From NCBI RefSeq assembly GCF_003918875.1, contig NW_025765736.1:682001-746000 (forward strand): a stretch of DNA of 64,000 nt, in the 5' to 3' direction. Positions 8,100 through 55,855 of this stretch are shown piece after piece. This stretch comes from Haliotis rubra (lineage: Eukaryota). Within the stretch, counting starts at the first letter, position 1. Each line of letters opens with the position of its first letter. The notes under the pieces are model-generated. The model worked only from the letters and a program-made list of their open reading frames with translations. It ran no database searches and was not told where the DNA came from. A program made the position numbers and the translations under genes.

Positions 8100-9305
8100 C
8101 AACCTCTTTATGAAACCGCACACTCCGGCACAGCGATGACTTAACATAATATCACTGCCACAGGCTTATTTGCATATCACGTGACCGGACTTTTCTCTTG
8201 TTTATAATCAAACGCGCATATTCATAATAAGCACTGTCCTCAAGGTATTGGATGGACATAATAATATTGAGACATATTATTGATTAATTGAAGCGCTTAC
8301 TTCGTACAATGCATTTATGCACATGTCTAAAGATATTTTCATTGATAGTATTTGACAGAGCAGGGTTGCCGTAAAGAATGGTATCAATGTCTAACTGAAC
8401 TTTTGATAGTTCAAAGTCTTTCTTCAGATCAAAACGGCAACTGACAAATTTTGGACATTTTAAGAAGAAATGGTTAGCATCTTCCACCGGAGCACCACAA
8501 TTGCAAGCTCTACTCTCTGATAGATTAACACGAAACAGATCTGCTTGTAATGAACTACACGAATGTCTTAACTTCGTGTGTAGTATATTTGTCTTTCTTT
8601 CACCAAATAGAAAATATTTTGGAACCTTGTCATTATTTCCAGATAACTTTGATTTAAACGATGATAATGAATTTGTACATTGTGTTGTAGAGGAGAGAGC
8701 ATTCCATAAACTTGCAGAATCATAGATAAATGACTTTTGGAGAATTGAGGTGCGAAATTTAGGAACAGCCAAATCTGATTTGTTACGCCAGTTTCAGTAA
8801 AAGGTGGAAGTAAATCTATCAGGTAATCAGGAGCTTGCATGTTAAATTTTTTGAAGAATGTACAGAGTTTCCTTTGTGTTCGTCTAACTTTCAATGGTAA
8901 CCAACCAGTTTCACTGTATAAACTATATCTTGAAGCGAATTTAGGCAATCCGGTTACAATTCGTGCTGCTTCAAGTTGTAACATTTCAAGTTTATCACAA
9001 ATATAGCTAGGGCAATTATCCCAGACCTCAGATGCATATTCTAAAATAGGCCTAATATACATTTCGCACATACTAGTAAGGATATATCTAGGTAATACGT
9101 ACTTTAGCGTCCGTAATGAGGAAACAATTTTTGCGGCCTTTTCTATTACAGCAGATACATGATGAGACCATTTTGTATTATCTGAAAAGATGACACCGAG
9201 GTGTTTATGTTGATGTACACGTTCCAAATGTTCATTATTGAAAATCAAGTCAGGAACTTGTGGACAATTTCCATTTTTAAAAAGCATGAATCTGGTCTTG
9301 TTCGG
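8100..9305 (-). mobile_element. CR1/L2-group LINE, 3' fragment (RT C-terminus, frameshifted)
   Basis: ORFs 8568-9287 and 8284-8772: HKHLGVIFS..KWSHHV, RPILEYASEVWD, CNCGAPVEDANHFFLKC. Confidence 0.9.
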
Positions 9306-12021: not shown

Positions 12022-13169
12022 TATATGGGCTAAGTGTACAGCTGTAGTTGTCGCTTCAATAGCATCCTGTAGTACAAGGTAATACTCCGTAACTGGAAAT
12101 AATGTTGATGAGCATTTTAAAATGTGTTAACAACTGGAAAATTCTAAAACCTTTTAGAATGTATAATTTGATCTACATTACCTGGATAATGACCACATCC
12201 AACCTCAGATGTATCCAGGCCAACAACCATAATACCATGACTTCAGTATATACTGGATTGTGACAAGTTCATTAAAGTCATTCAGTGGTATATAATCACG
12301 TTATATACCCTCTGAGTTTCCAACACAGTACGTTTATCTCCTAATTGTAAGTATAATTGTATGAAGAGGCAGTTTTTATCACATGGAAGAAATTGTAAAG
12401 AGAAACAGTGCAACAGATTGGTCAGCTGACCTAGATTAAATCTTGTTAACTGTAGGCATCAAAACATCCTCCACGATAAACTTTTCTTCATCTCGGAGAT
12501 GATTCAGATTGATAAACTATACACGCAAAGGACGACGCCTTGAAGGCGGGTCACTTTCCCTGAAGGGGAGGTAACTCGTGGAATGCTGTTATTAGGTCAT
12601 CTTCTACCGTGTCAGTTTGAGATCTCAGATAAAGATAATCGATTTACTGAGTTTCTTTTCTCTTGTTTTAGTAATCCTCAAAATAAGCAAAAATGCCAAA
12701 TGACTATCTTCGTTTCATTACTAATCTAATTAATACATTCGTCACAGTATCCACTCTTTCAAGTATTACATGCCCCTTTGTATTTATGTTCCGTGGATTG
12801 ACTTCCCGTGTCTTCTCGGTTATTTCAAAACGGACGGTTGTTTGGGGCACAGGGAGATGGAGTTAGGTACTCGTATACTATGATCGGGGGTAAGAATCTT
12901 AGGTTTAACCCGGCTGTTAGGTTTCAAACTCTCTCACTCATGTAAATGTAAATTAACGCACGACTGCAGAGCTAAATAAATAATGGTACAAGAAAACAGC
13001 CTCTCGGCACTGACCAGTATGTTCCAGGAATGCCAGGTATACGGATAATGATACACGAGAGGAGATGATGGTGAATAACCTAATGGGGGCAAATACGGTG
13101 CAGTCCTCCCATAACGTAGAGGAATGAATATATGAGATGTGCCTGTACGTTTTTGTGTTGACATCTGTC

Positions 13170-13492
13170 GATTTGTGTATGGATGTGTCTCTGGCAGTCT
13201 TTGAATGTGTCTGTGTTTCTGTTGATGTGCACATTGATGTACCTATGGATTTGTGTATGGATGTGTCTCTGGCCGTCTTTGAATGTGTCTGTGTTTCTGC
13301 TAATGTGCACATTGATGTACCTATGGATTTGTGTATGGATGTGTCTCTGGCGGTCTTTGAATGTGTCTGTGTTTCTGTTGATGTGCACATTGATGTACCT
13401 ATGGATTTGTGTATGGATGTGTCTCTGGCGGTCTTTGAATGTGTGTGTGTTTCTGCTAATGTGCACATTGATGTACCTATGGATTTGTGTAT
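13170..13492. repeat. 78-bp tandem repeat (about 4 copies)
   Basis: GATTTGTGTATGGATGTGTCTCTGGC...GATGTACCTATG repeated; explains the overlapping repetitive ORFs. Confidence 0.9.
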
Positions 13493-13992
13493 GTATATAA
13501 TTATTCATAAATGTCTACACTGGTGAGTCTGTGAATGTGTCTGGGATATGGCTACCGATGTGCCTATGAATTGTTTAATGTGGCGGTGGATATATCCCTC
13601 AGTCTTTCTACGAATGTGTCTAAAAGTGTGTCTATAGATGTATCAATGGATGTGTCTAAAGATATTTCTATAAACTGGGACAATATAGACGAAACTGTCT
13701 ACGAACGGATGAAGGGATGTGTCCATGTATCTGTGTCTGTCTATGAATGTGCCTTGAAAGGTATCTAGGGGTGTATTTATGAATGTGTCTGTGGACAAAA
13801 AAAAAAACAAAACAAACTAAAATATAAATAAATGAATGTATGTTCTGAAATGTTACCACGTATGACTAGGTAACAAACACAAAAGCGCATATAAACTGTA
13901 ACATTCAAACCTCTGTTAGAATGTGCTAGTCGAATGAGCAGCGTTCAGTTTGTGATCCGTACTCAGACCCCATTTCACCCCACCCTATCAGG

Positions 13993-14350
13993 TACCACAT
14001 CCGTGGTGTAGTGGTTAGAGCGTCCGCCCGGAGAGCGGAAGGTCGCGGGTTCGATCCCCGACCGCGTCATACCAAAAGACTTTAAAATATGGTACTTGTT
14101 GGTCCCTGCTTGGCGCTCGGCATTAATGGGTACAACAAGGACTGGTCAGCTCGGAGTCAGTATAATGTGTCTGAGTCGGGTATTCATGCTTCACTGCGGC
14201 ATGGTATGTCAGTGGGCTAGCACTATAAAACCAGCTTAAGTCTGTGCTAGTACAAGCAGCCGCACATACACATACACACGCATGCACGTCGTTATATTAG
14301 CGAAATATTCTCAAGCACGACATTAAACCCAATTTCACCTCACTTCACCA
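13993..14350 (+). mobile_element. tRNA-derived SINE with V-SINE-like central domain
   Basis: tRNA head GGTGTAGTGGTTAG...GGTTCGATCCC followed by GTCATACCAAAAGAC...CCCTGCTTGGCGCTCGGCA, resembling the V-domain from memory. Confidence 0.7.
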
Positions 14351-16002
14351 CCTTTTCAGCCCCTCACCCTCAAACCATCTCCACCCTACCGGGCGTCGGG
14401 GTAGCCTAGTGGTTAAAGCGTTCGTTCGTCACGGTGATGGACCGGGTACAATATCTGAAGCCCATTTCTAGTGTCCCGCGCCGTGATATTGCTGGAATAT
14501 TGCTAAAAGCGGCGTAAAAACCAAACTCACTCACTCACTCCACCCTTCCCAGTCTCCATACCCCGACAACAATGGACGTCAAGTTGTTTCGGGTGCAGCC
14601 GAACCATGAAGAGCTGTGGGTGGACCCTTGAATGTGGACGTACGTTGGTGCAGAGCAGTACACACACACCACGTCTCTCCTAAAGAACCTATGTGCAGGA
14701 ATGCATGAATATGAGGGGACTTTTCCCTGCGCTTTGTCCCGTGAATCATGTCACGAGAAGCTATATTTAACTCCTGCACACTACGCGATCCAGACTTCTC
14801 ATATTGATGCGAGTGTCGTTACACGGTGTACCGGGAGGATAGTTACACGGTGTGACGGGGGGAGCCAAGCAACTGTCAAACGATACAGAACACAACCCGC
14901 TTCTTCGGGGAGAGGACGATCAGGTAAGGAATCTAGTCCACGTCACTGGTGGTGTTAGATATAGATCTGTAGAGTGTCTGTCTGTCTCTACCACATTAGC
15001 ATGACAGGTGGATCTACTATCAGTCTGGACAATATTTCTTGGGCATGGACCCATTTGACCCTTTATATGCATTTGTGTCATAAATATACCTATATTGCAA
15101 GGGTCAGTTTATAATTATATTTCGGATAATCTCATAATACGATTGACTGGAAGAATGCGTGCAATACCTCGGCTAAAGGGGAACCCGGAAGTTCTTTCAG
15201 CCATTGGAGATCTCCATATAATCTCTCTTGCTTTTTACGTTTTGTCTGGCGTTGAGGATGTTTATAATAGTCAGATATGGTTCTAGGTAAAATGGTTTAA
15301 CGACAAAACGACATCTAAGACTGCTAAATTGCTGGGTCATATTTCTATCCTTGAATCCGTGTAGATGTACACAAACCATTGAGTTGTACTCCGATAATAA
15401 AACATTGAGCATAGTCAAGTAGTGTACATGATAACCTCGGCAAAATGATATTCAGCAGCTCTACAGGCAAACCTGTTTGTGACATGATTGTGAGGAGAAG
15501 GTCCTGATAGTTTGATCATTACTTGCAGATGTGGTCAGCAGTCTGGTCATGTGTATCATAGAGGGTTACCTAAACCATTGCACCCGTGAAAATCCGGGTT
15601 AGAATTAGTCTTCAGCAGCCCATGCTTGTCGAGAGAGGCGACTAACGGGATCAGGTGATCAGGCTCGCGGACTTGGTTGACACATGTCATCGTATCCCGA
15701 TCGCGTAGAACGATGCTCGTGCTGTTTATCACTGGATCGCTTGGTCCAGACTCGATTATTTACAGACCGCCGTCATATAGCTGGAATATTTCTGAGTGCG
15801 GCGGTATAAACAACAACCAACCAACACAAACCATTGCAAATATCATAGACGGTCATGATACTTGTCCTCTAAAAAGCATCGGATTCTCGAAAGGAACCTT
15901 TAAATTTCCTAAATTGTAGCAAATATTAGTTTTCTAGTAATTGTTGTATGGTAATAATGAACGAATTGGGAACCCATAACACCCGGTGGTATGTTATGAA
16001 TG

Positions 16003-16784
16003 GCGATAAGTGTAAGATGAGAAGGACGGTGGGGGTAAGATGAGAAAGGCGATAAGTGTAAGATGGGAAGGACGATGGGGGTAAGATGAGAAGGACGATG
16101 GGTGTAAGATGGGAAGGACGATGGGAGTAAGATGGGAAGGACGATGGGGGTAAGATGAGAAGGACGATGGGAGTAAGATGAGAAGGGAGATGGGGGATAA
16201 GATGAGAAGGAGAAGGACGATGGGAGTAAGATAAGATGAGTAGGACGATGGGATAAGATGAGTAGGACGATGGGGGTAAAGATGAGAAAGGACGATGGGG
16301 GTAAGATGAGAAGGACGATGGGGTAAGATGAGAAGGACGATGGGGGTAAGATGAGAAGGACGATGGGGGTAAGATGAGAAGGACGATGGGGGTAAGATGA
16401 GAAGGACGATGGGGTAAGATGAGAAGGACGATGGGGGATGGGGACGATAAGTAAGATGAGTAGGACGATGGGAGTAAGATGAGTAGGACGATGGGAGTAA
16501 GATGAGAAGGGACGATGGGGTAGTAAGATGAGTAGGACGATGGGGGTAAGATGAGTAGGACGATGGGTGTAAGATGAGGACGATGGGGTAAGATGAGAAG
16601 GACGATGGGGTAAGATGAGAAGGACGATGGGGGTAAGATGAGAAGGACGATAAGGTAAGATGGAGAAGGACGATGGGGATAAGATGAGTAGGACGATGGG
16701 GGTAAGATGAGAAGGACGATGGGGGTAAGATGGGAAGGACGATAGGGGTAAGATGAGTAGGACGATGGGGGTAAGATGAGTAGG
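16003..16784. repeat. 23-bp purine-rich satellite (GGGGGTAAGATGAGAAGGACGAT)n, left part
   Basis: Direct tandem array that continues in register after the Polinton-like insertion. Confidence 0.95.
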
Positions 16785-16937
16785 TGTTGTACACAGGCTG
16801 GAATGGCCCTAAATCCGCCATTTTGATTTTATGACGTCATCATCGAACACCTGGCTGACCTCATTTCACAAGGGTGTCAATGACCTTGTACTGAGTTGAC
16901 CTTGGATTAAACAACTTTTCCAAGCGGTATTTTTAGA
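16785..16937 (+). repeat. Left terminal inverted repeat of the Polinton-like element
   Basis: Reverse complement of 21304-21456; contains CCGCCATTTT (YY1-like) and TGACGTCA (CRE). Confidence 0.95.
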
Positions 16938-18384
16938 TCAGGAGCATAGCAACCGAAAAAAAAATGACATCAGGGTAGTCATGTAGATTTACATGTGTAA
17001 GAGTGTGCAAACTCACTCCGGTGTGACTCACCCTGACCGAGGGGTCAATAACCGCGCGTCCCGTGGGAAACACATCATAGCATCACACCATGACATCATC
17101 CCATTAATTTAGACCAATCAGCGTAGAACAACTATCGGACTGACTGGACCACTGACCACAAACTAGTTTCATCCGGTTTCAATTTTACCTATTAAAAAAA
17201 CCCTCTGACAGTCAGTTGAAGTTATCATTTTGTCTTCTTACAAAATGTTTATATTTTCTATACTCAATAACCTTTTCTGCGGCCTGTGGAGAAAATCTGT
17301 CATCTCAGAGCGCGCGCCGTTGAGGCATGGTGAATTAACAGTCGCAGCCTCCACACACTTCCCTCGTCTCACTCAGCCGAGGTGTAATATGATACCTCCT
17401 CAAGTTGTACTCAAAATCGTGGGTCTAACATTAGCCTGTCTCACGTGTCTGACCCATATTATTTTGCCTACAGCCTAGCCCTCCCTGCACTGCTAAGGCT
17501 CTAAATGAAGTCTAGATTTCCCCCAGGTCTGCCTTGGGCTCCTTGTCAATTTAAATAGGTTTGTTTGTTACTATCAAGATAATACATTCAGAGACTAAAC
17601 ATTAGTCTAGTCAAACATGTGCACTCATATGTGTAAAAAAGAAATTATACGGGTTTTATAACACATTTGTTCAATGCAATCAGCGTTCATTGCCACATGA
17701 AAATGATTTGAGTTTGTCTTGACCATCACCAGAACAACCCAACTCAATAGAATTTCAAATGTATTTCAAACTTACCGGTATTCACATTCCATATTTGAAT
17801 ATCCAATCCATATTGTCATTGTATCCTGCCTTGTAATGCGATAAATTTAGGAATCAGGGATGATATTGAGATGTTATACCCAAATCCCATATGTTTGTGA
17901 TTGTATTGAATGAATCAACCACCAAAACACATGAGACTAATATTGCACCTTCCATGTAAATAGAACATATGTTATATCTGGGATTGTGTTGTGCAAAATA
18001 CTCTCCCTCTCACAGTGCTAGCAGAGACGCGATCTGGTGACCCACATTTGCGTGTGTGGGACTATGCTGTGGCGGGAGGGGTAGGGGAGGGACGGGGGCA
18101 CTGCTGTGGCAGAGGGAGGGAGGTTTCTGTCGACAGTTATAGCCTGACGACATTTCTCGTGAGTGTAAAACACCCATAAATATAAATGCTCGTTAGAATG
18201 AACGCTAGCTAGGGCGTGTCAGCTTTGAAATGTGCGTTCTGGTCATGGGGTTTTTGTACATCATATTTAGGAATGCAACTTTCAACTTTCTAAAATTCCA
18301 TCAGGAAAGGGGTGTAATTGTATAGTGTTAGCATGAAAGAGTAATCATAAATGACAATTCACAGGTGTATATTATTTTCATATG

Positions 18385-18530
18385 GGTATTTATATAGCAC
18401 TATAGTCCATACCGCATGCATGCTCAAAGGGCTGGTAACTTTTTCCTTGGATGTCAATCACCATTCTCAACTCCCCGGGGAGCATCTTGCTGCCACTAGG
18501 CGCACTAAGTTAATGTGGCTCCCAACGAGG
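18385..18530 (-). mobile_element. SINE 3' fragment (family C) nested in the Polinton-like element
   Basis: Similar to the 3' parts of 42165-42640 and 57830-58010. Confidence 0.65.
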
Positions 18531-18657
18531 TATACATCACAAAAAAACAAGATAAACTGATTTTCATTTTTTTATTAGCTCCGTTTCAAACGAGTACAAC
18601 TACGGGATAGGAGCGCTCCCAGAAGTTTACTTTACATCTGTTGTCTTATCACCGTTC

Positions 18658-20561
18658 CTAATCGTCATGGCCTTCACTCTCTTCATCAGATGTTATGTCT
18701 GCATTATCATCTTCGGTCAAGCCTTCGACCCAAGACTTATATTGGTACAGATTGGAAAACACATCATGATACAGATTATTTGTGTCTCCTACTTGTTTCA
18801 GTATTCCTTGTGTCTTTGGACCATACTGCATATGGAACAGATAAGTAATAAACCAGGCATACGTCTCTTTAAACGTGCTCCACATGTATTTGTTCAGTTT
18901 GGCTTGAATCGTGTCTTCGTTTAAACCTCTTTTCATGTACAGCTGTCGTTTCTCATCCAAAAAGTCTTTATTCAGCTCACGTGTACGTGAATACATTTGT
19001 CTTATACCTTGCTCTTCGAGATCAGCCATCTTTTTTTTCCTGTTGTTTTGTGCGACTTCGTTTAATGATTCATCATCATCATCATCATTTTCCATTTCAG
19101 GACATTGTTTATCGTGTAAATGTCTTTGTAAGTTGTGGTTATTGCTAAACACTTGACCGCAATAGTCACAATCTGACAGTGTACGCGGTGCCTTCACAGG
19201 AGAGAAGTTGTCGTCTTCCTCCCTCTTCCTTTTAACTTGGGGTATTCCCGGTGGACACACTGAAGACTTTACAGGACACTAGTTTCTTCTGTGTTTTTGC
19301 AAATCATGCACGTCTTGAAACATGAGTCCACAGTCATCACAAGATGGCATGGTTGGGAGGTTTTCTTCACACGTCTGCTCACGCCGAAAGTCTAACTCGG
19401 ACTGAATGGTCCTAGCTTGGTTGTCTCCTTTTAAGCTGAATGCATTGGGGCAAAGTCGCAAATGGGGAGGTGTTTGGGGTTTTAGATCAACCAACAAGTA
19501 ACCATATGGTTTCTGGATAGCCCTTTGAAACGGCTCCATGAAACGGTCTGTGTTACCTGGATACATTTGCCTCGCCAAAGTCATGATGGGTTGTTGATCG
19601 ATAGGGTTGTTGAACAGAAGCAGATAATGGCAGTTTCTTCGTTGTGTGGGATCCTTATAGTCTCTCGTACAGACCCTGAAGCAAATATATCCAAGAAAGC
19701 CCACACAAGTCTAGAGAATGTGGCAAGTCTAGATTTCCTCAGCTTCAGGAAGAAAGTCTCAGGGCTCCTTTTCATTATATTTTATTTTTTTTACTATGAA
19801 CTTTTTTCAGTAAAATATGTTCATTTCAGAGACTAGTTGTTAGTCTAGGATCCTTACTGAAATACAAATTCTGGTTCAAGGCTATCACTGAGATTACGAT
19901 GATGACTTCCTTCCGTAAACAGATCTGTAATGCGTGGATCTTTGCCCGCTGTCGACATTAAGTCGTCGAGGATCACCACATTCACCACATGGGGGTCCAG
20001 AAACGCATCCTTTTCGAGATCAGAAGGAATGCCTTGATGAAATTCCACATAGGGATAAACATGGGTTTGAATGGTGTTATACAAGGGCTGCCATCGTTTG
20101 TAGAGCCAAATAATACGTTCAGGATAAGGTTTAATGTTCATGCGTTCTAGAATCTGTTTCACTAAGTACGTTTTCCCACAGGAGGTGGGCCCTGAGACAA
20201 TCATGGTGAAGGGGTGTATCAGTCTACATTCTTCCAAAGCACCCACATGTGGTTGCACTNNNNNNNNNNNNNNNNNNNNNNNNNNNNNNNNNNNNNNNNN
20301 NNNNNNNNNNNNNNNNNNNNNNNNNNNNNNNNNNNNNNNNNNNNNNNNNNNNNNNNNNNNNNNNNNNNNNNNNNNNNNNNNNNNNNNNNNNNNNNNNNNN
20401 NNNNNNNNNNNNNNNNNNNNNNNNNNNNNNNNNNNNNNNNNNNNNNNNNNNNNNNNNNNNNNNNNNNNNNNNNNTCGTCTGTGTTGATTCCTGAGATGTC
20501 TAAGCATGGCATCCCTTCTGGAAAACGTCTGATAGCACACGGGACACGTTGCTGACTGCAT
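18658..20561 (-). pseudogene. C2H2 zinc finger + A32/FtsK-like DNA packaging ATPase + two further zinc fingers (Polinton/adintovirus type), disrupted
   Basis: N-terminal CPVC...HLRNQH; Walker A SGPTSCGKT; Walker B VVILDDLM; LFTEGSHHRNLS; RRNCHYLLLFNNPID; KPYGYLLVDLKP; then CDDC...HRRN*CP and CDYC...HLHDKQC. Lesions: frameshift near 19885, 190-bp insertion 19658-19847, TAG at 19279-19281 (probable W codon). Assembly gap 20260-20474. Confidence 0.85.
19658..19847. mobile_element. 190-bp insertion in the ATPase gene with 9-bp duplication GGATCCTTA
   Basis: GGATCCTTA at 19649-19657 and 19848-19856; internal short IR TAGTCTCT...AGAGACTA; related sequence at about 17425-17612. Confidence 0.7.
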
Positions 20562-20657
20562 GGTGGTCCGAGTCTAAATGGCAAAGAACCTGTCTACTAG
20601 CTGCTTTTATCTAAAAACACGTCTTCCGTTTCTTTGTGCGACTCTGGGAGGAAGTCA

Positions 20658-20915
20658 TTATTTTGGCTTCAGTTTCCCCGTTCTCCTGCATCTGAATACG
20701 TGCTCTGGCCTGTTGAACGACTTGTTGGGTTGGAGACGTGAGAGCAAACTTTTCTGTAGAAGGGTTAGGTCTATCTTTACCCCTTGTTTCTCATAATAGA
20801 TCACATAATCATCCACGTTAGTAAAGGGATTGGGATATCCTTTAGCCTGCAAATAGTAATATTTGGTCCATTTCTTAGGATCGTCCAAATAGGGTCTCCA
20901 GTATCGTCTGTTCAT
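20658..20915 (-). CDS. Small Polinton/adintovirus-like putative virion protein (PYxxDPKKWxxYYxxQA motif), probably truncated
   Basis: ORF between the penton-like remnant and the ATPase, co-oriented; motif resembles small proteins of invertebrate Polintons from memory. Confidence 0.45.
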   Translation of the reverse strand: MNRRYWRPYLDDPKKWTKYYYLQAKGYPNPFTNVDDYVIYYEKQGVKIDLTLLQKSLLSRLQPNKSFNRPEHVFRCRRTGKLKPK

Positions 20916-20923
20916 TATCTTGT

Positions 20924-21055
20924 TCAGAATGAATACTGACTCTCACACAGAGGTTTCAGATGAAGTGTCACTATCACGGGTCCACGGCTAAATGAAGCTA
21001 AATCACCGTTTCTGTCCTTTATATAGATATCTGCTAGCCCTAATTCTAAAAACAT
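20924..21055 (-). pseudogene. C-terminal remnant of a Polinton minor capsid (penton-like) protein
   Basis: DIYIKDRNGDLASFSRGPVIVTLHLKP resembles the terminal beta-strands (I.I.D..G...F..G.V.VTLH) of Polinton minor capsid proteins from memory. Confidence 0.55.
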
Positions 21056-21060
21056 GTTGT

Positions 21061-21132
21061 TAGCAGAGCGTGGTTTCGATCCACGGTCCTCTGGGTTATG
21101 AGCCCAGAGCGCTTCCACTGTGCCACTCTGCT
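21061..21132 (-). tRNA. tRNA-iMet: Initiator tRNA-Met (CAT) variant carried inside the Polinton-like element
   Basis: AGCAGAGTGGCACAGTGGAAGCGCTCTGGGCTCATAACCCAGAGGACCGTGGATCGAAACCACGCTCTGCTA: A1-U72, anticodon stem CTGGG/CCCAG with CAT, T-loop ATCGAAA. TTTTT terminator 8 nt downstream; TATAAAA about 30 nt upstream. Confidence 0.9.
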
Positions 21133-21303
21133 CTCCCTTCACCTACCTTTTGTTAGGACTTTTATACACCACATCAACCAATGACAACCAAAATTGATTT
21201 ATTCTCAAATAGTCACAAATACACACAGTATTGTACAATGAGCATCGCATTGAAGTCTGAATGACATGGGGACTGTTCGGGGGCCTTATATTGCCCACTT
21301 GAG

Positions 21304-21456
21304 TCTAAAAATACCTCTTGGAAAAGTTGTTTAATCCAAGGTCAACTCAGTACAAGGTCATTGACACCCTTGTGAAATGAGGTCAGCCAGGTGTTCGATG
21401 ATGACGTCATAAAATCAAAATGGCGGATTTAGGGCCATTCCAGCCTGTGTACAACA
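21304..21456 (-). repeat. Right terminal inverted repeat of the Polinton-like element
   Basis: Ends ...CAGCCTGTGTACAACA, followed by the TSD AGTAGG. Confidence 0.95.
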
Positions 21457-22401
21457 AGTAGGACGATAGGGGTAAGATGAGAAGGACGATGGGGGTAAGA
21501 TGAGAAGGACGATGGGGGTAAGATGAGAAGGACGATGGGAGTAAGATGAGTAGGACGATGGGAGTAAGATGGGAAGGACGATGGGGGTAAGATGAGTAGG
21601 ACGATGGGGGTAAGATGAGAAGGACGATGGGGTAAGATGAGAAGGACGATGGGGGTAAGATGAGAAGGACGATGGGGGTAAGACAGGAAGGACGATGGGG
21701 TAAGATAAGTGGTAGGACGATGGGGGTAAAATGAGTAGGACGATGGGGGTAAGATGAGAAGGACGATAGGGTAAGATGGGAAGGACGATGGGGTAAGATG
21801 AGTAGGACGATGGGGGTAAAATGAGTAGGACGATGGGGGTAAAATGAGTAGGACGATGGGGGTAAGATGAGAAGGACGATGGGGGTAAGATGGGAAGGAC
21901 GATGGGGTAAGATGGTAGGACGATGGGGGTAAAATGAGGGGACGATGGGGGTAAGATGAGAAGGACGATAGGGGTAAGATGGGAAGGACGATGGGGGTAA
22001 GATGAGTAGGACGATGGGGTAAGATGAGTAGGACGATGGGGGTAAGATGAGAAGGACGATGGGGGTAAGATGGGAAGGACGATGGGGTAAGATGAGTAGG
22101 ACGATGGGGGTAAAATGAGTAGGACGATGGGGGTAAGATGAGAAAGGACGATAGGGGTAAGATGGGAAGGACGATATGGGGTAAGATGAGTAGGACGATG
22201 GGGGTAAAATGAGTAGGACGATGGGGGTAAGATGAGTAGGACGATGGGGGTAAGATGAGAAGGACGATGGGGGTAAGATGAGTAGGACGATGGGGGTAAG
22301 ATGAGAAGGACGATGGGGGTAAGATGGGAAGGACGATGGGGGTAAGATGGGAAGGACGATGGGGGTAAGATGAATAGGACGATGGGGGTTAAGATGAGAA
22401 A
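21457..22401. repeat. 23-bp purine-rich satellite, right part
   Basis: Same unit and orientation as 16003-16784. Confidence 0.95.
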
Positions 22402-22559
22402 TGTTGTCGTTAGGTTGTCGCTTAATATTTCCGTAAAACATTCAGTCATTCACTAGGACCGACATGTATATTCCATATGTCTCCCAAATGACAATTTGAG
22501 GGAATCTGCACCACGTGCACCAAGTTCGGCGAAACGTGCTCGGCGACTTATGACATAGA

Positions 22560-23170
22560 CACACACGCCTCCCTACCATGTCCCATGTGTGGTCTATGGA
22601 GGATAAGTCGATGTTCATTTATGACATGGACACTGAGTACACCATACTGCATGTAGACGATTTCTAATCGTCTGAGCAGTAACTCGTACTCAGTAGAGTG
22701 ATGGAAGGTTGCAACAATTTGATCGACTCGGTATAGTTCAGTTTCGTGGAGCCTCGCTTCGGATCAATGGAATCTATACATCTGTCGTTGCCCTGAACAC
22801 TTGAACATTGTTGACTGGTTAATCACATGCTCAGGAATGGCCGACAGCACGCTGTCACTGTGGTCCTGCCGAAGCGGTGGCCCAACGCCGTTGGTGCTGA
22901 TGAGGCCACGGTGAGCAGCCAGTTAGGCAACAGAAAATGTGCAGATGATGGTTATCTTGTGGGTGTGGTCACTCTCGGTCTTCTGTTTGTGGGACTGTCA
23001 GATGTCTAGTAAATCCGGTTGAAGCGTCGCAGTAGTCAGATGACGGTCTGCCTTGTGCTTCCGAATGTTCTGGCAATGTGTCTGTTCGAAGCCCCCATCT
23101 GCGATATTCCAATGGCTCTTTGTCTGCTGATACACTTGGAATTCTGGTATGTGCAACGAACAATCTCTGT
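22560..23170 (-). mobile_element. Degenerate Tc1/mariner transposase remnant
   Basis: RQRAIGISQMGASNRHIARTFGSTRQTVI is homologous to the 11485 ORF; continues in broken frames. Confidence 0.7.
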
Positions 23171-23550
23171 GTGAACTGTGTGATGAAAGTATGCTAAACG
23201 GTTAGAGAGAATACAATTTATGGACAACAAACTCCTTAATGAAAACCCAACGCGTATCATGAAGCAAGACCATCGGACGAAGGTCATAGGGGAGGAAGCT
23301 GTCATTGGACAGCAAAGAACCTTGTTGTTTGTTTGATCGGCGTTCTTGAAGTTGGGGAGTCAACAGTGTAGCAAACAACTTTATGATGCCAACTTCTTGT
23401 TTACCGATGTAAGAACCTTTGCATTCTACAAGAAGTTGTCATCCATAAAGTTGCATACTTCATTTTTTAGCAACGAACTTCGTTTTACGACCCTGTGACA
23501 CAACGTCAACAGAAATATCCCCGTCCTAACAAACAGAGGATGTGAGGTTT

Positions 23551-23617
23551 GAGTATATATAAACAATAACACTATGCGAATTGCCGCTAACGTTTCAGAA
23601 AAGGCAGTGAAGAGACG
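23551..23617 (+). promoter_or_regulatory. Possible TATA promoter and non-coding first exon of CABIT paralog 2
   Basis: TATATATAAA at about 23554, candidate donor ACG|GTAAAA at 23617/8, and acceptor TTCGCAG at 24043 just before the ATG. Confidence 0.35.
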
Positions 23618-24048
23618 GTAAAATCGGCCACTCTTTTAACTCGGTATTTTTGGTTCGTGGCGAAGAGTAAACATTTAGTCAGTAGAAGAGTAACAGTGGT
23701 ATTGTTTGTTGCTTTGTCAGTCTGCGATTCCGATATTGTACAACTTGTCACCACGCTGTATGTACCACACCGTTTACACTTCACACCATGGATCACGCTG
23801 GGATATACCTGTGTTGTTGTTTGGGGTCAGGCTAAACAAACAGACTCGTGAAGCGTACATACAATCTTGGAACCGTGTTGCTGAGGGGCATTTTATTAAG
23901 AAATTCAGTGATCTTACTTAAATAGCCTTAATGTTTCTCGAAATCAGGAATGATTGCACGACATATGGCAATATTTTAACCCCTTTCATTTAAGACATAC
24001 ACTTTCACGATTCAATCTTAATGCATTTCACCGACATTCGCAGAAAAC

Positions 24049-27000
24049 ATGGCGTCGAAGGAATTCCTGTATAAGATGGTACAGTTTGAAACCAGAGAGG
24101 AGAACTACTCTATGCCGGAGTTCTTTGACCGGTTCTCACAGAAGTTACCAGTATTCGTTATAGTCACACAGGGGTGTTACGGCTTTACAGACCTCGAAAC
24201 CTTCTCCGCTGAACAGGCAAGTTTCTGTTTCTGTAATTCTGTGGTTAACACGTTGGACGTCTATGTATTCTGTGCTGAACACGTAAGGCATTTATATATT
24301 AATGTGATTGTAATATATATGTTTGACAGGTAAATCGATATGTTTATACTACTGAACATGTAAGGTCTCTATACATTCTCATTTGAACAGGTTAATCGTC
24401 TTTACCTTCTCTGTTGAACAGGTAAGGCGTCTATATATTTATACAGCTGAGCATGTAAGGCATTTATACATTCTTACATGGACAGGTAGATCGTCTTTAC
24501 GTTCTCTGTGGAACAGGAAAGGTGTCTGCATATTTATACTGCTGAACATGTAAGGCGTTTATACTCTTACATGGACAGGTAGATCGTCTTAACGTTCTCT
24601 GTGGAACAGGTAAGGTGTCTGAGTTAAGATTTTATCGGCAGTATTACTCGTATCGTGACTCAACGTTTGTTTGATCTCACGGCATTCTAAATGGCGTTTT
24701 GAGATACATTTTTCTATTGACTATTGAAACCTTATCATTTCTCTCCCCATTAGGCTCTGTTCTGCCACAGCTACGTCAAACAGAGGCGGGTGGTCGCGCG
24801 GGACTCACGTGGCAGGACAATCAGCATCCCCGAGGAGTACCCCATGAAGTTCAAGATCGTCATATCCAGACAAAAGAGTATGTGATAGACAGTGAATATG
24901 GATTTAAACCACTGTTAATAATATCATAATATAATACACCAACAATGTCATGGCGGCTGACGCCAGAAACGGGCTTCACGCACTCCAGTACCCACGTGGA
25001 GAATTCAACCCCAATTTTCGATGTACGTTGTAAGTGCTAGGCTACGTCATCGCCAAAGACGTAATGACGGTCACGGTGGGCTGTTTAATTACGAGTTTCC
25101 AGACCTTCGCCAGGTGGGAATCTGTGCGTAATATATATCTATGGACAACCGCGATGGTTTTAAAAGTCCAGTGCACCTAGAATCTAACGAATTCAACGAG
25201 ATCCAGGTTCTGGGATTTAGACTCATGCTTACATGAATTATGTTCCTTCCAGCTATTCTAGTCGTCCATGCGAAAATGAGTATAATCATAATAGATAGTG
25301 AGTGATCTGGGTGTAACGCATTTTTTAACAGTTATATCACGGTTTATCAGCTGAATGTTGGGTAAAGGTATTGTTGGTGTGTTACATGAGCCTTCGATCT
25401 CATACCGGTCATAACCACAATATGATATTCCTGTTCTTCCATCGCACCAAGGGGCGGTGGGGTAGCCTAGTGGTTAGAGCGTTCGCCCGTCACGCTGAAG
25501 TCCCTGAGTTCGATTCCCCACATGGGTACAATGTACGAAGCCAATTTCTGGTGTTCCCCGCCGTGATATTACTGCAATATTGCTAACGGCGTAAAACGTT
25601 CCCGCATGCACTTTTACACAAATTCTAACATCCTCACAAACGATCGCACGCACACAAAAACAAACACACACATTGATACAAACACCAACGTTCAAACAAA
25701 CACAAATCACGCACACAAACACACGTTGATTCAAATGCCAACATCCTCCCTCACGATCTCTAACGCACACACACACATACGCAGAATCGCTGATATACAT
25801 GATAACATCCTGACAACCGTTCCAGCACACAAACACACATCACGCAAACACGTTGATACAAATACGAGCACTCTCTCTCAAACGATCGCAGGCACGCTCA
25901 CGCACAGACACACATACGTGCGCGCGGGCGTGTCCACGTCCACATCCATATCCTATTTCCACGGCCACATCCACGTCCACATCCACGTCTATCAGGCCTT
26001 CTTCATTTTAATATCATGTGATGGTATCAAATGTGACACTATCAAATGATGTGTCCCCCCAAACCCTTGTTTCAGTGGGACCAGAACAGACGATGAAACA
26101 GATCCTCCTTGAGAACAAATTGCCAGTCCAGGTCAGGTTTTCCGCCCCAGCTAACGTCGCCTTTTACATCGGATCTGATGAACAGAAGGCCAAGGACCTC
26201 AGTAATCTCGCCCTGTCACACATCTACGAGGAGACCTTCATCATAGCCAATGGAGTCTACGGGCGTAAGTCTTAATCATTTGTTGAGACAGAAGGCGTCG
26301 GGAGAAGTCAGTAAGGAGGCATAAGACCCTGCAGACCAATACTGGTTGGCATCATCATGGCTTCTGTAGACGAGAGCCTTGATAGCAGCCCTCTGGATCC
26401 AGAACCGCCCCTGACAATGATAGAAAGAGTCAGGATTCCGAACTGTTACGGGACGTTGGCGCAGACGAACAACGTATCCCAGGGAGGTTCTGTTGAATAG
26501 AAGTTAGCTATCCATGGTAGTTTCCGACCATCACTATCATTAAAAACATTCAAATTGTTGACTACACGGAAAACGTACGTACGGGTGATAGTATCATCAT
26601 GATGGTTAATTGTTGGTGAACAATGCTAGCATGGGTGAAGAGAAGATTTCTGCCCTTACCAGGTTTATGTACGTACGAGCATTCTGAATTTTCAAATCGA
26701 GAATAATTGAAATTTTGTTCATATGATCAGTGATTCAATACGGGTATTCCCAAGGCTAGGGGATGGTAGCCTAGTAGTTAAAGCGTTTGTGCATCATGCC
26801 ACAAACCCGGGTTCGATTCCCATCATGGGCACTGTGCACGAAGCGCATTCCTAGTGTCCCCCACCGTGTAATAGTGGGATTATCGCTAAACGCGCCGTAA
26901 AACTCACTTACTCACTCATTCTCCAGGGTCCGTGGACATGAGTCCGGTGGTGGTGCCGCTGTACATTGATGATCTGTGTGTGTCCACGGTGAAGGGCGTC

Positions 27001-48231: not shown

Positions 48232-49310
48232 TACGGAAGCGTAGTAGGGCCACGGTGAAATTTTTTGGGTCTTACTATCTCCTACGTAGTACTTATATCT
48301 CCTACGTAGGACTTAGTATCTCCTACGTAGGACTTAGATATCTCCTACGTAGGACTTAGTATCTCCTACGTAGGACTTAGTATCTCCTACGTAGGACTTA
48401 GTATCTCCTACGTAGGACTTAGGACTCCTACGTAGGACTTATCTCCTACGTAGGACTTAGTATCTCCTACGTAGGACTTAGTATCTCCTACGTAGGACTT
48501 AGTATCTCCTACGTAGGACTTAGTATCTCCTACGTAGGACTTAGTATCTCCTACGTAGGACATAGTATCTCCTACGTAGTACTTAATATTTCCTGTAGGA
48601 GATGATCGATATACGTTTATATGGATTAATCTGAAACGGTCGACTTAAAGCCCCAGACACGCACACAATCTCCTGTTTCACTGTTTCAGTCACTGTAAGA
48701 GTCTACAGTCATTCGTTTCATTCACTATTAGAGTCTACAGTTATGTGTTTCATTTACTGTTAGAGTCTACTATCATGTGTTTCAATTTACTATTAGAGTC
48801 TACTGTTTCCTTCACTATTAGAGTCATGTGTTCAACTAATTGTTGCACATTAGTACTGTGTTGGACCGACTGTTATACTTTACTGCCTTGCGTTCAGTTT
48901 GCTCTACTATTACGCGTTGCAGTTAGTTCACTGTTATATGTTGCACTTTGTTACACTTTACTATTATGCATTGGATATTTCAGAGGTCGTTGCACATGAA
49001 TCATAATCTGCGTGTACAGACGTGTCTTAGACTATAGGTGGCAATCTATGTGTACGTATCCCCTTATATTTATACAAATAACTATAATGACAATTCTTTG
49101 CCTTTTTGAATTTCGTATTGTTTTACGCCGCACTCAACACTTGTCCACCCCAGTCAAGTCAACCTGTAAACAATTACGAATAAAACCGCAAACGAGCGTT
49201 GCATCCGATCCAACCTAGCCCCATCAAGACAAACAACAACTTGCGGAGGTCGTGTTATAACCCGAGTTTCATATCACAACCTCACCCCAATCACATCCCA
49301 CCCAACCATC

Positions 49311-49361
<51 letters not shown>

Positions 49362-49816
49362 TAGATGTATGTATGATAGATTAAACATAACCATACCCAA
49401 ACCTCCATAACTGCAATTAGAACAGGGTCCACGTCACCCTAACGTAATACACACACAATAACACTGTACAGTAACACTGCGTTAGTGTCATGAATATTCA
49501 CTGACTCACATTTCGACTATCTAACGTCCTGCATAGCCAAACATTTCTCAACTTAATAACCATCCTTAAAAGGATATATTAAGTCCTACGTAGGAGATAC
49601 TAAGTCCTACGTAGGAGATACGTCCTACGTAGGAGATACTAAGTCCTACGTAGGAGATACTAAGTCCTACGTAGGAGATAGTATGTCCTACGTAGGGAGA
49701 TATTATGTCCTACGTCCTACGTAGGAGATATACTAAGTCCTACGTAGGAGATATTAAGTCCTACGTAGGAGATATTAAGTCCTACGTAGGAGATATTAAG
49801 TCCTACGTAGGAGATA
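48232..49816. mobile_element. Non-autonomous DNA element with inverted subterminal arrays of a 21-bp unit containing the palindrome CCTACGTAGG
   Basis: Left array TAGTATCTCCTACGTAGGACT at about 48275-48600 and right array AGTCCTACGTAGGAGATACTA at about 49575-49816 are reverse complements. Putative left end TACGGAAGCG; right end not found. Confidence 0.65.
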
Positions 49817-53600: not shown

Positions 53601-55855
53601 ACCCCACCAGATCAGACACCTTCACCCTGTCAATCTTGCTCTACTGCAGCACTTCTTTGCTGACTCTACCCTCTCCTGTATTGCTGCTTCACGTCACCAG
53701 ATCAGACACCTTCACCCTGTCAATCTTGCTCTACTGCAGTACTTCTTTGATGACTCTACCCTCTCCTGTATTGCTGCTTCACGCCACCAGATCAGACACC
53801 TTCACCCTGTCAATCTTGCTCTACTGCAGTACTTCTTTGTTGACTCTACCCTCTCCTGTATTGCTGCTTCACCCCACCAGATCAAGCACCTTCACCCTGT
53901 CAATCTTGCTCTCCTGCAGTACTTCTTTGCTGACTCTACCCTCTCTAGTATTGCTGCTTCACCCAACCAAATCAGGCACCTTCACCCTGTCAATCTTGCT
54001 CTCCTGCAGTACTTTTTTGCTGACTCTACACTCTCTAGTATTGCTGCTTCACCCCACCAGATCAGACACCTTCACCCTGTCAATCTTGCTCTACTGCAGC
54101 ACTTCTTTGCTGACTCTACCCTCTCCTGTATTGCTGCTTCACCCAACCAAATCAAGCACCTTCACCCTGTCAATCTTGCTCTCCTGCAGCACTTCTTTGC
54201 TGACTCTACCCTCTCCTGTATTGCTGCTTCACCCCACCAGATCAAGCACCTTCACCCTGTCAATCTTGCTCTCCTGCAGTACTTCTTTGCTGACTCTACC
54301 CTCTCCTGTATTGCTGCTTCACCCAACCAGATCAAGCACCTTCACCCTGTCAATCTTGCTCTCCTGCAGTACTTCTTTGATGAATCTACCCTCTCCTGTA
54401 TTGCTGCTTCACGCCTACAGATCAGACACCTTCACCCTGTCAATCTTGCTCTACTGCAGCACTTCTTTGATGACTCTACCCTCTCCTGTATTGCTGCTTC
54501 ACCCAACCAGATCAGACACCTTCACCCTGTCAATCTTGCTCTCCTGCAGTACTTCTTTGCTGACTCTACCCTCTCCTGTATTGCTGCTTCACGCCACCAG
54601 ATCAAGCACCTTCACCCTGTCAATCTTGCTCTCCTGCAGTACTTCTTTGATGACTCTACCCTCTCTAGTATTGCTGCTTCACGCCACCAGATCAGACACC
54701 TTCACCCTGTCAATCTTGCTCTACTGCAGTACTTCTTTGCTGACTCTACCCTCTCTAGTATTGCTGCTTCACCCCACCAGATCAAGCACCTTCACCCTGT
54801 CAATCTTGCTCTCCTGCAGTACTTCTTTGATGACTCTACCCTCTCCTGTATTGCTGCTTCACCCCACCAGATCAGACACCTTCACCCTGTCAATCTTGCT
54901 CTACTGCAGCACTTCTTTGCTGACTCTACTCTCTCCTGTATTGCTGCTTCACCCAACCAGATCAGACACCTTCACCCTGTCAATCTTGCTCTCCTGCAGT
55001 ACTTCTTTGCTGACTTTACCTTCTCCTGTATTGCTGCTTCACCCAACCAGATCAAGCACCTTCACCCTGTCAATCTTGCTCTCCTGCAGTACTTCTTTGA
55101 TGACTCTACCCTCTCTAGTATGTATTGCTGCTTCACCCCATCAGATCAAGCACCTTCACCCTGTCAATCTTGCTCTCCTGCAGTACTTCATTGCTGACTC
55201 TACCCTCTCTAGTATTGCACCTTCACCCAACCAGATCAAGCACCTTCACCCTGTCAAGCTTGTTCTCCTGCAGCACTTCTTTGATGACCCTACCCTCTCT
55301 AGTATTTATTGCTGCTTCACCCCATCAGATCAAGCACCTTCACCCTGTCAATCTTGCTCTCCTGCAGCACTTCACTGATGTCTCTACCCTCTCTAGTATT
55401 GCTGCTTCACCCCGCCAAATCAGGCACCTTCACTCTGTCAATCTTGCTCTACTGCAGCACCTCTTTGCTGACTCTACCCTCTCTAGTATTGCTGCTTCAC
55501 CCCACCAGATCAGGCACCTTCACCCTGTCAAGTTTGTTCTCCTGCAGCACTTCTTTGATGACTCTACCCTCTCTAGTATTGCTGCTGCACCCCACCAGAT
55601 CAAGCACCTTCACCCTGTCAAGTTTGTTCTCCTGCAGCACTTCTTTGATGACCCTACCCTCTCTAGTATTGCTGCTTCACCCCACCAGATCAAGCACCTT
55701 CACCCTGTCAATCTTGCTCTACTGCAGCACCTCTTTGCTGACTCTACCCTCTCTAGTATTGCTGCTTCACCCCACCAGATCAGGCACCTTCACCCTGTCA
55801 ATCTTGCTCTCCTGCAGCACTTCTTTGATGACTCTACCCTCTCCTGTATTGCTGG
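50630..55855 (+). repeat. 90-bp satellite (about 58 units) derived from an LTR-retrotransposon env-like coding segment
   Basis: Unit translates as HLHPVNLALLQ(Y/H)FF(A/D)DSTLS(C/S)IAASPHQI(R/K) and runs in frame into unique IAGDTTFRK... sequence. Confidence 0.9.

What the first reader, a model, noticed from the sequence alone, without database searches (positions are those of the whole stretch)
21040..21185. Element-borne variant initiator tRNA-Met with a compensated T-stem, TATA box and Pol III terminator
Seen: a 72-nt cloverleaf keeping the eukaryotic initiator determinants (A1-U72, three consecutive G-C pairs in the anticodon stem, CAT, ATCG T-loop). Its T-stem reads CGTGG/CCACG where the usual metazoan tRNAi has GATGG/CCATC, i.e. 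paired compensatory changes. There is one D-stem mismatch (A12-C23). Upstream TATAAAA and downstream TTTTT are intact. It sits about 170 bp inside the right TIR, co-oriented with the virion genes. Inference: compensation implies long-term selection in the element lineage rather than recent passive capture. It could boost translation initiation, act as a decoy against eIF2-based or tRNA-cleaving antiviral shut-off (loosely analogous to adenovirus VA RNA), or work as a Pol III insulator/promoter.
Basis: partly seen in the sequence, partly recalled or inferred. Interest (0 to 1): 0.85.

Follow-up and report, generated by a model that had tools for sequence, protein, structure and literature searches.

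The report
Initiator tRNA gene inside transposon remnant
A real, nearly intact initiator methionine tRNA gene rides inside a short, decayed virus-like transposon, but its "special" stem also occurs in ordinary tRNA genes elsewhere, so it looks like a carried-along cellular gene, not a viral adaptation.

Summary
A 72-nt tRNA-Met(CAT) gene lies at 21061-21132 on the minus strand (ARAGORN; Rfam 56.9 bits). It has A1:U72, three G:C pairs in the anticodon stem, A54 and A60, a CGUGG/CCACG T-stem and one D-stem non-pair (A12-C23). TATAAAA sits at -34 and T5 starts 9 nt downstream. The gene is 171 bp inside the right arm of a 153-nt, 99% identical inverted repeat. The element is only 4,672 bp (16785-21456), has a perfect 6-bp duplication (AGTAGG) and split a 23-bp minisatellite. 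Its only virus-type gene is a broken packaging-ATPase gene with zinc fingers. I found no polymerase, integrase, protease or capsid gene.

The inference does not hold. Chance ORFs that read through initiator tRNA genes in public assemblies show the same 49:65 and 50:64 pairs in about 130 of 147 cases, in 118 different flanks. Two unrelated contigs carry the identical T-arm. The window's tRNA differs from those by five bases, one of which breaks the D-stem at a CpG.

Best reading: a passenger tRNAi gene of cellular type on a non-autonomous Polinton/Maverick derivative. Interest is low to moderate.

The parts
21061..21132 (-). Initiator-type tRNA-Met (anticodon CAT) gene, 72 nt including the discriminator A
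   Evidence: ARAGORN; Rfam tRNA 56.9 bits; pair list; internal A-box region TGGCACAGTGG and B-box region GGATCGAAACC read.
21160..21166 (-). TATAAAA at -34 to -28 of the tRNA gene (upstream Pol III TATA-like element)
   Evidence: chance of a TATAWAW in that 15-nt zone is about 0.012.
21048..21052 (-). T5 run, likely Pol III terminator, starting 9 nt after the tRNA 3' end
   Evidence: chance is about 0.04.
21017..21026 (-). Second TATA-like box (TATATAAAGG) about 35 nt downstream of the tRNA; possible Pol II promoter for the downstream minus-strand ORFs (inference only)
   Evidence: Read.
16785..21456 (.). Whole element, 4,672 bp: a non-autonomous TIR element with termini TG...CA, inserted into a minisatellite
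16785..16937 (+). Left terminal inverted repeat, 153 nt
   Evidence: 99% complementary to the right arm.
21304..21456 (-). Right terminal inverted repeat, 153 nt
16779..16784 (+). Left copy of the 6-bp target-site duplication AGTAGG
21457..21462 (+). Right copy of the 6-bp target-site duplication AGTAGG
19279..20561 (-). Packaging-ATPase-like gene (A32/IVa2 type) with an N-terminal and a C-terminal C2H2 finger. BROKEN: the pieces that match full-length relatives lie in three reading frames (at least two frame changes), there is one short nested insertion, and there is a 215-nt run of N
   Evidence: Pfam Adeno_IVa2 21.9 bits (cut-off 21) and Pox_A32; N-terminal zf-C2H2 27.3/25.6 bits; 333 relatives, mostly bivalve or unnamed; frame count and outer bounds; relatives are C2H2-Pox_A32-C2H2.
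18658..19260 (-). 200-aa ORF with one C2H2 finger and an acidic tail. It may be the tail of the same gene in some relatives
   Evidence: Pfam zf-C2H2 24.4 bits, just under the cut-off; a single homologue at 51% identity; some ATPase relatives align into this stretch.
20658..20915 (-). 85-aa ORF between the tRNA and the ATPase gene; no relatives found, possibly not a gene
16012..16784 (+). Left half of the 23-bp minisatellite that the element split (host target)
21457..22400 (+). Right half of the same 23-bp minisatellite, same orientation

Best explanation
This is an ordinary-type nuclear initiator tRNA-Met gene carried as a passenger in the subterminal non-coding region of a short, non-autonomous, partly decayed derivative of a Polinton/Maverick-like element. 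The element transposed recently into a 23-bp minisatellite.

How it works (inferred from established Pol III and tRNA biology, not shown here):
- The internal A and B boxes recruit TFIIIC.
- The TATA-like box at -30 helps place TFIIIB/TBP.
- Pol III transcribes the gene and stops at the T5 run.
- The transcript is end-processed, receives CCA, and is charged by MetRS through the CAU anticodon.
- A1:U72, the three G:C pairs and A54/A60 direct it to eIF2 and the P site.

The gene most likely came from a cellular tRNAi gene picked up by the element lineage. It now spreads, and decays, with the element. Its T-stem is a naturally occurring tRNAi allele, not an element-specific invention. This copy is slightly weakened: an A12-C23 non-pair at a former CpG makes the cloverleaf about 3.6 kcal/mol less stable than clean genes with the same T-arm.
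For: - The tRNA and its signals are real.
- The gene lies inside the TIRs and the TSD. Removing one AGTAGG copy restores the minisatellite register, so the whole 4.67-kb unit including the tRNA arrived by transposition.
- The element is a remnant: only a broken A32/IVa2-type ATPase gene, and no other Polinton hallmark in any ORF of the element or among the ten long ORFs elsewhere in the window that were scanned.
- The T-stem is not special. Arg/Arg codons (C49,G50 / C64,G65) occur in 129-130 of 147 tRNAi genes read through by chance ORFs, in 118 flank contexts.
- The exact T-arm is on L006 and L007, with unrelated flanks. Other tRNAi genes, with other T-stems, lie in tandem tRNA clusters, a cellular arrangement.
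- The Rfam score is only 2-3 bits below clean tRNAi genes: 56.9 against 58.7-59.7.
- The cloverleaf is -23.3 kcal/mol against -26.1 to -27.1 for clean genes.
- Human, yeast and all fetched tRNAi have G12 in a CpG; the window has A12.
- tRNA genes as cargo of Polinton-like viruses and virophages are documented: 558 tRNAs in 8,300 genomes (PMC12220804), and flagged tRNA genes in MELD viruses (PMC8502044).
Against: - The host's own tRNAi genes could not be obtained, so 'cellular type' is shown only for unidentified eukaryotic contigs, not for this host.
- Five positions (12, 25, 26, 33, 47) are essentially private to the window's copy: 1, 2 and 3 of 147 instances at the three codons that report them. 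That fits either long residence in an element lineage or a host-specific allele.
- All initiator identity elements survive those changes.
- Whether sister copies of the element carry the tRNA is untested.
- Expression is untested.
Confidence: 0.6

Rival explanations
1. Selected cargo. A lineage of Polinton-derived elements keeps its own initiator tRNA because it helps the element. It could add tRNAi during replication, or the TFIIIC/Pol III-bound tDNA next to the terminal repeat could act as a chromatin barrier protecting the nearby TATA-driven gene.
For: - The position is tidy: 171 bp inside the TIR, co-oriented, and about 35 nt upstream of a second TATA box.
- All initiator determinants and both Pol III flanking signals are intact despite five private substitutions.
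- Only one of the five breaks a pair, and one turns G-U into G-C.
- tRNA cargo is recurrent in related virus-like elements.
- tDNAs are cited as organisers of genome structure (PMC9679248).
Against: - The T-stem argument collapses.
- With only five substitutions, one broken pair is what neutral change would often give. My rough estimate is P about 0.26 for one or fewer breaks; this is my own arithmetic, not a tool result.
- This copy sits in a gene-poor remnant with a broken ATPase gene.
- No called ORF in the 15-billion-protein collection shares the tRNA plus the window's flank.
- No paper in the searchable library links Polintons with initiator tRNA.
Confidence: 0.15
2. Dead relic. The tRNA gene is a decaying pseudogene that is no longer transcribed, or that gives a misfolding, rapidly degraded tRNA.
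For: - The A12-C23 non-pair in a 4-bp D-stem arose by a CpG-type transition.
- The cloverleaf is 3.6-3.8 kcal/mol weaker than the closest genes (L004-L007) and sits 5.5 kcal/mol above the predicted MFE fold.
- The surrounding element is decaying.
Against: - Only one non-pair in 21.
- The Rfam score is close to clean genes.
- The A and B box regions, the TATA and the terminator are intact.
- Predicted MFE folds miss the cloverleaf for the clean tRNAi genes too.
- The TIRs are 99% identical, so there has been little time for decay since insertion.
Confidence: 0.2
3. Head of a tRNA-derived SINE, or a host tRNA gene that merely lies next to an insertion.
For: The window does hold tRNA-derived SINE-like heads elsewhere (14002-14064, 14391-14437, 25452-25521).
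Against: - There is a single copy in 64 kb, even allowing 3 mismatches.
- It is a complete 72-nt cloverleaf followed by T5 after 9 nt, with no SINE body or tail.
- It lies inside both the TIRs and the TSD, so it is part of the inserted unit.
Confidence: 0.03

Closest known systems
Cellular eukaryotic initiator tRNA-Met genes (multi-copy; 30-42 predicted per bivalve genome, PMC9679248)
   Same: Shares A1:U72, three G:C pairs, A54, A60, the CAU anticodon, U51:A63, 72 nt, internal promoter and T-run terminator. It is 93% identical to the tRNAi genes on L006/L007, including the whole T-arm, and 86% identical to the human tRNAi printed in PMC8216282.
   Different: It sits inside a transposon rather than in a tRNA cluster. 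It has G50:C64 instead of the vertebrate A50:U64. Five bases are private to this copy, one of which breaks the D-stem.
tRNA genes carried by Polinton-like viruses, virophages and other mid-size eukaryotic dsDNA viruses (PMC12220804; PMC8502044 Fig. 6)
   Same: A tRNA gene as small cargo on an element of the Polinton-related assemblage.
   Different: The reported cases are mostly elongator tRNAs (His, Leu, Arg) in protist elements with full gene sets. Here it is an initiator tRNA on a 4.7-kb animal remnant without replication or capsid genes.
Polinton/Maverick transposons (PMC4405056)
   Same: TIRs, a 6-bp target-site duplication (my own knowledge of the family), and an A32/IVa2-type packaging-ATPase gene.
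   Different: 4.7 kb instead of 15-20 kb. No pPolB, RVE integrase, protease or capsid genes were found. The ATPase carries C2H2 fingers. The termini are TG...CA.
Virus-encoded Pol III RNAs: adenovirus VA RNA and the tRNA-like genes of murine gammaherpesvirus 68 (named from my own knowledge; no sequences fetched or used)
   Same: A Pol III unit near a genome end of a virus-like element.
   Different: Rfam reports only tRNA here and no VA or other viral RNA family. The sequence is a canonical tRNAi that should be chargeable, not a decoy fold.
tRNA-derived SINEs
   Same: A tRNA-related Pol III promoter on a mobile sequence.
   Different: Complete tRNA with its own terminator, no body or tail, one copy in the window.

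Membership tests
Eukaryotic initiator tRNA-Met | Cloverleaf tRNA with CAU anticodon | tested here: met
   ARAGORN; Rfam 56.9 bits; 20 of 21 stem pairs are standard.
Eukaryotic initiator tRNA-Met | A1:U72 pair (PMC4425011) | tested here: met
   Pair list.
Eukaryotic initiator tRNA-Met | Three consecutive G:C pairs in the anticodon stem | tested here: met
   G29-C41, G30-C40, G31-C39.
Eukaryotic initiator tRNA-Met | A54 and A60 in the T-loop | tested here: met
   T-loop AUCGAAA.
Eukaryotic initiator tRNA-Met | A50:U64 and U51:A63 pairs (listed for eukaryotic initiators in PMC4425011) | tested here: inconclusive
   U51:A63 is present, but 50:64 is G:C. The feature is not universal: yeast has U:A and C:G, and the tRNAi genes on L004-L007 have G50:C64.
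Eukaryotic initiator tRNA-Met | Expressed, CCA-tailed, charged with Met, used by eIF2 | not testable with these tools
   No expression data are available.
Pol III type-2 (tRNA) gene | Internal A and B box regions, T-run terminator close to the 3' end | tested here: met
   TGGCACAGTGG and GGATCGAAACC are in place; T5 starts 9 nt downstream. The box consensus is from my own knowledge.
Polinton/Maverick | Terminal inverted repeats and 6-bp target-site duplication | tested here: met
   153-nt TIRs at 99%, AGTAGG on both sides.
Polinton/Maverick | FtsK/A32-type DNA-packaging ATPase | tested here: met
   Adeno_IVa2 21.9 bits against a cut-off of 21 for the window's piece. Full-length relatives pass the Pox_A32 cut-off. 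The gene is broken.
Polinton/Maverick | Protein-primed B-family DNA polymerase | tested here: not met
   No such Pfam hit in any ORF of the element that was scanned (the longer ones and all >=35-aa ORFs of the left arm) or in the ten long ORFs scanned elsewhere in the window.
Polinton/Maverick | RVE-family integrase | tested here: not met
Polinton/Maverick | Adenovirus-type protease and double/single jelly-roll capsid proteins | tested here: not met
   Only ORF-level Pfam scans were run, so heavily decayed traces could be missed.
Polinton/Maverick | Length 15-20 kb (PMC4405056) | tested here: not met
   4,672 bp. It is therefore filed as a non-autonomous derivative, not as a Polinton.
tRNA-derived SINE | tRNA-related head followed by a body and tail; many dispersed copies (criteria as in PMC10294476) | tested here: not met
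   The terminator follows directly after the tRNA. There is one copy in the window. Genome-wide copy number was not testable.
Viral Pol III decoy RNA (VA-type) | Match to a described viral small-RNA family | tested here: not met
   Rfam, all 4,227 families: only tRNA at the gathering threshold over the whole window. At E<=1 over 13000-26000 there was only one more weak tRNA match, outside the element.

The most novel reading that the evidence does not exclude
A family of Polinton-derived elements in bivalve-like hosts keeps its own, slightly divergent initiator tRNA gene at a fixed subterminal position as selected cargo. The cargo would either supply tRNAi or act as a Pol III/TFIIIC chromatin boundary for the element's first promoter. 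This would be the first initiator tRNA known on an animal Polinton-type element.
Probability: 0.12. Interest if true: 0.6.

Novelty: new member of a known kind. Interest (0 to 1): 0.3.

Why it matters
If the tRNA is only a passenger, the locus is a clean example of a DNA transposon moving a Pol III gene. That could help explain the large and variable tRNA gene counts in bivalve genomes. It is also a caution for tRNA gene annotation, because element-borne copies inflate the counts. If the tRNA proved to be conserved cargo of an element family, it would extend the known habit of viruses carrying tRNAs to the initiator tRNA and to animal Polinton-type elements.

Tried and rejected
- Literature search for the tRNA's own strings (T-arm, 5' half, anticodon arm): no paper holds them. 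A shorter T-loop string did give published human and yeast tRNAi sequences, which I used as comparators.
- Searches for 'Polinton + initiator tRNA' and 'Mavericks + tRNA + cargo': nothing relevant. The supplements of PMC12220804 did not list tRNA-Met.
- Homologues of the 85-aa ORF: none. Homologues of the 200-aa ORF: one.
- Identifying the host by exact look-up of two ORFs outside the element: not on record.
- Naming the taxon of the tRNAi contigs through cluster names: all are unnamed ENA entries.
- Bacterial promoter/terminator scan: irrelevant here.
- PDB sequence search with a full-length ATPase relative: only zinc-finger hits.
- MFE folding: the cloverleaf is not the predicted MFE for this or for any clean tRNAi gene, so that criterion was dropped in favour of cloverleaf energies.
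- Rejected readings: host tRNA gene adjacent to an insertion (it lies inside the TSD), SINE head, and chance match.

Full report
**1. Is it there?**

Yes. ARAGORN finds one tRNA in the 64-kb window: tRNA-Met(CAT) at 21061-21132 on the minus strand. Rfam's tRNA model scores it 56.9 bits against a gathering score of 29, E 1.3e-9, with one non-standard pair flagged in the D-stem.

Read on the minus strand, the 72-nt sequence has:
- A1-U72;
- G29-C41, G30-C40 and G31-C39;
- the T-loop AUCGAAA (A54, A60);
- the T-stem CGUGG/CCACG;
- 20 standard pairs out of 21. The exception is A12-C23.

TATAAAA lies at -34 to -28 (21166->21160). A T5 run starts 9 nt after the 3' end (21052->21048). From the window's own motif frequencies these two have chance probabilities of about 0.012 and 0.04. 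No second copy exists in the window, even with three mismatches allowed.

**2. What surrounds it?**

A 153-nt inverted repeat, 99% complementary, has arms at 16785-16937 and 21304-21456. Aligning the two ends shows termini TG...CA and a perfect 6-bp direct duplication, AGTAGG, immediately outside both arms.

The flanks are the two halves of one 23-bp minisatellite in the same orientation (16012-16784 and 21457-22400). With one AGTAGG copy removed, the repeat register runs on unbroken. So a 4,672-bp unit, tRNA included, arrived here by transposition, and recently, given the 99% arm identity. The tRNA starts 171 bp inside the right arm.

**3. What is the element?**

On the tRNA's strand lies a gene whose pieces match the adenovirus IVa2 / poxvirus A32 packaging-ATPase families: PF02456 at 21.9 bits against a cut-off of 21. 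It has a C2H2 finger at the N terminus (27.3 and 25.6 bits, both above cut-off) and another after the ATPase part.

A protein search finds 333 relatives. The best are 72-75% identical, and the named ones come from Mytilus, Mercenaria and Ruditapes. Full-length relatives are C2H2-Pox_A32-C2H2. The host is therefore probably a bivalve. However, nothing above 75% identity was found, and two ORFs outside the element are not on record, so the host genome itself seems absent from the protein collections.

The ATPase gene is broken. Against full-length relatives its matching pieces lie in three reading frames, so there are at least two frame changes. It holds one short nested insertion. It also contains a 215-nt run of N (20260-20474), which I left as it is.

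No Pfam trace of a protein-primed polymerase, RVE integrase, protease or capsid protein was found in the element's ORFs or in the ten long ORFs scanned elsewhere in the window. A 200-aa C2H2 ORF has a single homologue, and an 85-aa ORF has none.

Measured against the Polinton definition in PMC4405056, the element has the TIRs, the 6-bp duplication and the ATPase. It lacks everything else and is a quarter of the usual length. I therefore call it a non-autonomous, decaying derivative. 'Virion genes' overstates what is there.

**4. Is the T-stem special?**

I took comparators only from tools.
- The human initiator tRNA printed in PMC8216282 differs from the window's at 10 of 72 positions: standard numbering 12, 16, 25, 26, 33, 47, 49, 50, 64, 65.
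- Yeast tRNAi (PMC7957392) already has C49:G65, and U:A at 50:64. These pairs therefore vary naturally among eukaryotes.

To sample more tRNAi genes without fetching any relative of the element, I used a 72-aa chance ORF that reads straight through the tRNA gene as a protein query. Gene callers on assemblies often call such ORFs. In this frame the codons report positions 49-51 and 64-66. The search gave 179 hits, all through the tRNA-coded part, and their flanks are unlike the window's.

In 147 complete instances from 123 proteins:
- the two diagnostic codons are Arg (C49,G50 / C64,G65, the window's state) in 129 and 130 cases;
- the human-type Asp/Ser occurs in 8 and 7;
- other compensated combinations also occur;
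- the Arg/Arg class has 118 different flank contexts.

I then fetched the DNA, with 1 kb on each side, of seven such places by looking up the chance ORFs. The results were:
- L006:249-320 and L007:295-366 carry exactly CGTGG-ATCGAAA-CCACG;
- L001, L004 and L005 carry CGAGG/CCTCG;
- L002/L003 carry GATGG/CCATC.

Outside the 72 nt nothing in these loci resembles the window. Several lie in tandem tRNA clusters, which is a cellular arrangement. The compensated T-stem is therefore a common natural tRNAi allele, and it says nothing about selection inside an element lineage.

Caveat: the taxa of these ENA contigs are unknown, and the library is not a balanced census.

**5. What is private to this copy?**

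Against L006/L007 the window differs at five positions: 12, 25, 26, 33 and 47. The codons that report them are nearly unique among the 147 instances (1, 2 and 3 cases).
- A12 replaces a G that is part of a CpG in human, yeast and every fetched gene. It breaks the 12-23 pair, which is the signature of methyl-CpG decay.
- C25 turns G10-U25 into G10-C25.
- The other three are unpaired positions.

The Rfam score is 2-3 bits under clean genes (56.9 against 58.7-59.7). The cloverleaf is 3.6-3.8 kcal/mol weaker than in L004-L007 (-23.3 against -26.9 to -27.1 kcal/mol; L002 is -26.1). The predicted MFE is not the cloverleaf for any tRNAi tested, so that fact alone means little. With five changes, one broken pair is compatible with neutral drift. 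My rough arithmetic gives about 0.26 for one or fewer breaks.

**6. Explanation**

Most likely (0.6): a cellular-type tRNAi gene carried as a passenger on a non-autonomous Polinton/Maverick derivative. It is still equipped to be transcribed by Pol III and to enter initiation, and it is slightly weakened.

The mechanism is inferred from established knowledge: TFIIIC on the A and B boxes, TBP/TFIIIB at the -30 TATA, termination at T5, charging through CAU, and eIF2 recognition of A1:U72 (PMC4425011, PMC11231383).

Rivals:
- selected cargo (0.15);
- dead relic (0.2);
- SINE head or neighbouring host gene (0.03).

tRNA genes on Polinton-like viruses and virophages are already documented. No paper in the library links Polintons with an initiator tRNA. 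Bivalve genomes are reported to hold 30-42 tRNAi genes, so one element-borne copy adds little to the pool.

**7. What I did not do, and slips**

I did not search public collections with the tRNA, TIR or ATPase as a DNA pattern. I did not look up the contigs of ATPase homologues. I did not fetch any Polinton, adintovirus or adenovirus record.

I made no splice model and joined no pieces. Each piece was searched apart, by reference.

None of the fetched contigs was taken for human. L002/L003 have the vertebrate-type T-stem but differ from the printed human sequence at two positions. P0153, and the Asp/Ser class in general, look vertebrate-type. I printed one short alignment of P0153 before noticing this, and did not look it up afterwards.

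Slips:
- In my private reasoning I twice recalled tRNAi strings of a vertebrate and of an insect from memory.
- While first reading the ATPase region I worked out, in reasoning only, where a frame change and the nested insertion lie. Those places are not given in my notes, scripts' output or this report.

**8. Verdict**

It is a new member of a known kind: tRNA cargo on a Polinton-related element, here an initiator tRNA on an animal remnant. Interest is 0.3.

Noticed in passing
window 16012-16784 and 21457-22400: A 23-bp minisatellite (unit GTAAGATGAGAAGGACGATGGGG, about 33 + 41 copies) that the element split in two. It produces the long spurious ORFs 15994-16821 and 21407-22449.
   Followed up: yes
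window 50634-55854: A 90-bp satellite with 57.8 copies at 91% identity and strong strand composition skew. It explains the overlapping 800-1200-aa ORFs there.
   Followed up: partly
window 48271-48594 and 49571-49816: Two arrays of a 21-bp unit in inverted orientation, about 1 kb apart: a foldback-like structure.
   Followed up: no
window 14002-14064, 14391-14437, 25452-25521: tRNA-related sequences below the Rfam cut-off (25.5 bits) that recur about 11 kb apart. They are probably heads of a tRNA-derived SINE family and are unrelated to the initiator tRNA.
   Followed up: partly
   Followed up: no
window 16785-21456 (inside the element); also near 42.5 kb and 57.9 kb: A short repeat of about 0.1 kb occurs twice inside the element. 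A 0.15-kb stretch of its left half recurs twice elsewhere in the window. These are small dispersed repeats nested in or shared with the element.
   Followed up: partly
window 8284-8772: An ORF with a weak zf-RVT (reverse-transcriptase zinc-binding) match: retroelement debris.
   Followed up: no
L001:251-1202; L002:986-1608; L005:294-2415; protein P0122: Tandem arrays of initiator tRNA genes on unidentified ENA contigs: 3 and 4 genes in a row, a Leu-Gly-iMet unit repeated every 1237 bp, and one ORF running through 18 iMet genes spaced 192 bp apart.
   Followed up: partly
window 19279-20561 and relatives P0009, P0040, P0045: The packaging-ATPase family here is flanked by C2H2 zinc fingers at both ends. 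This architecture is abundant in bivalve proteomes (333 hits) and, to my knowledge, is not usual for Polinton ATPases.
   Followed up: partly
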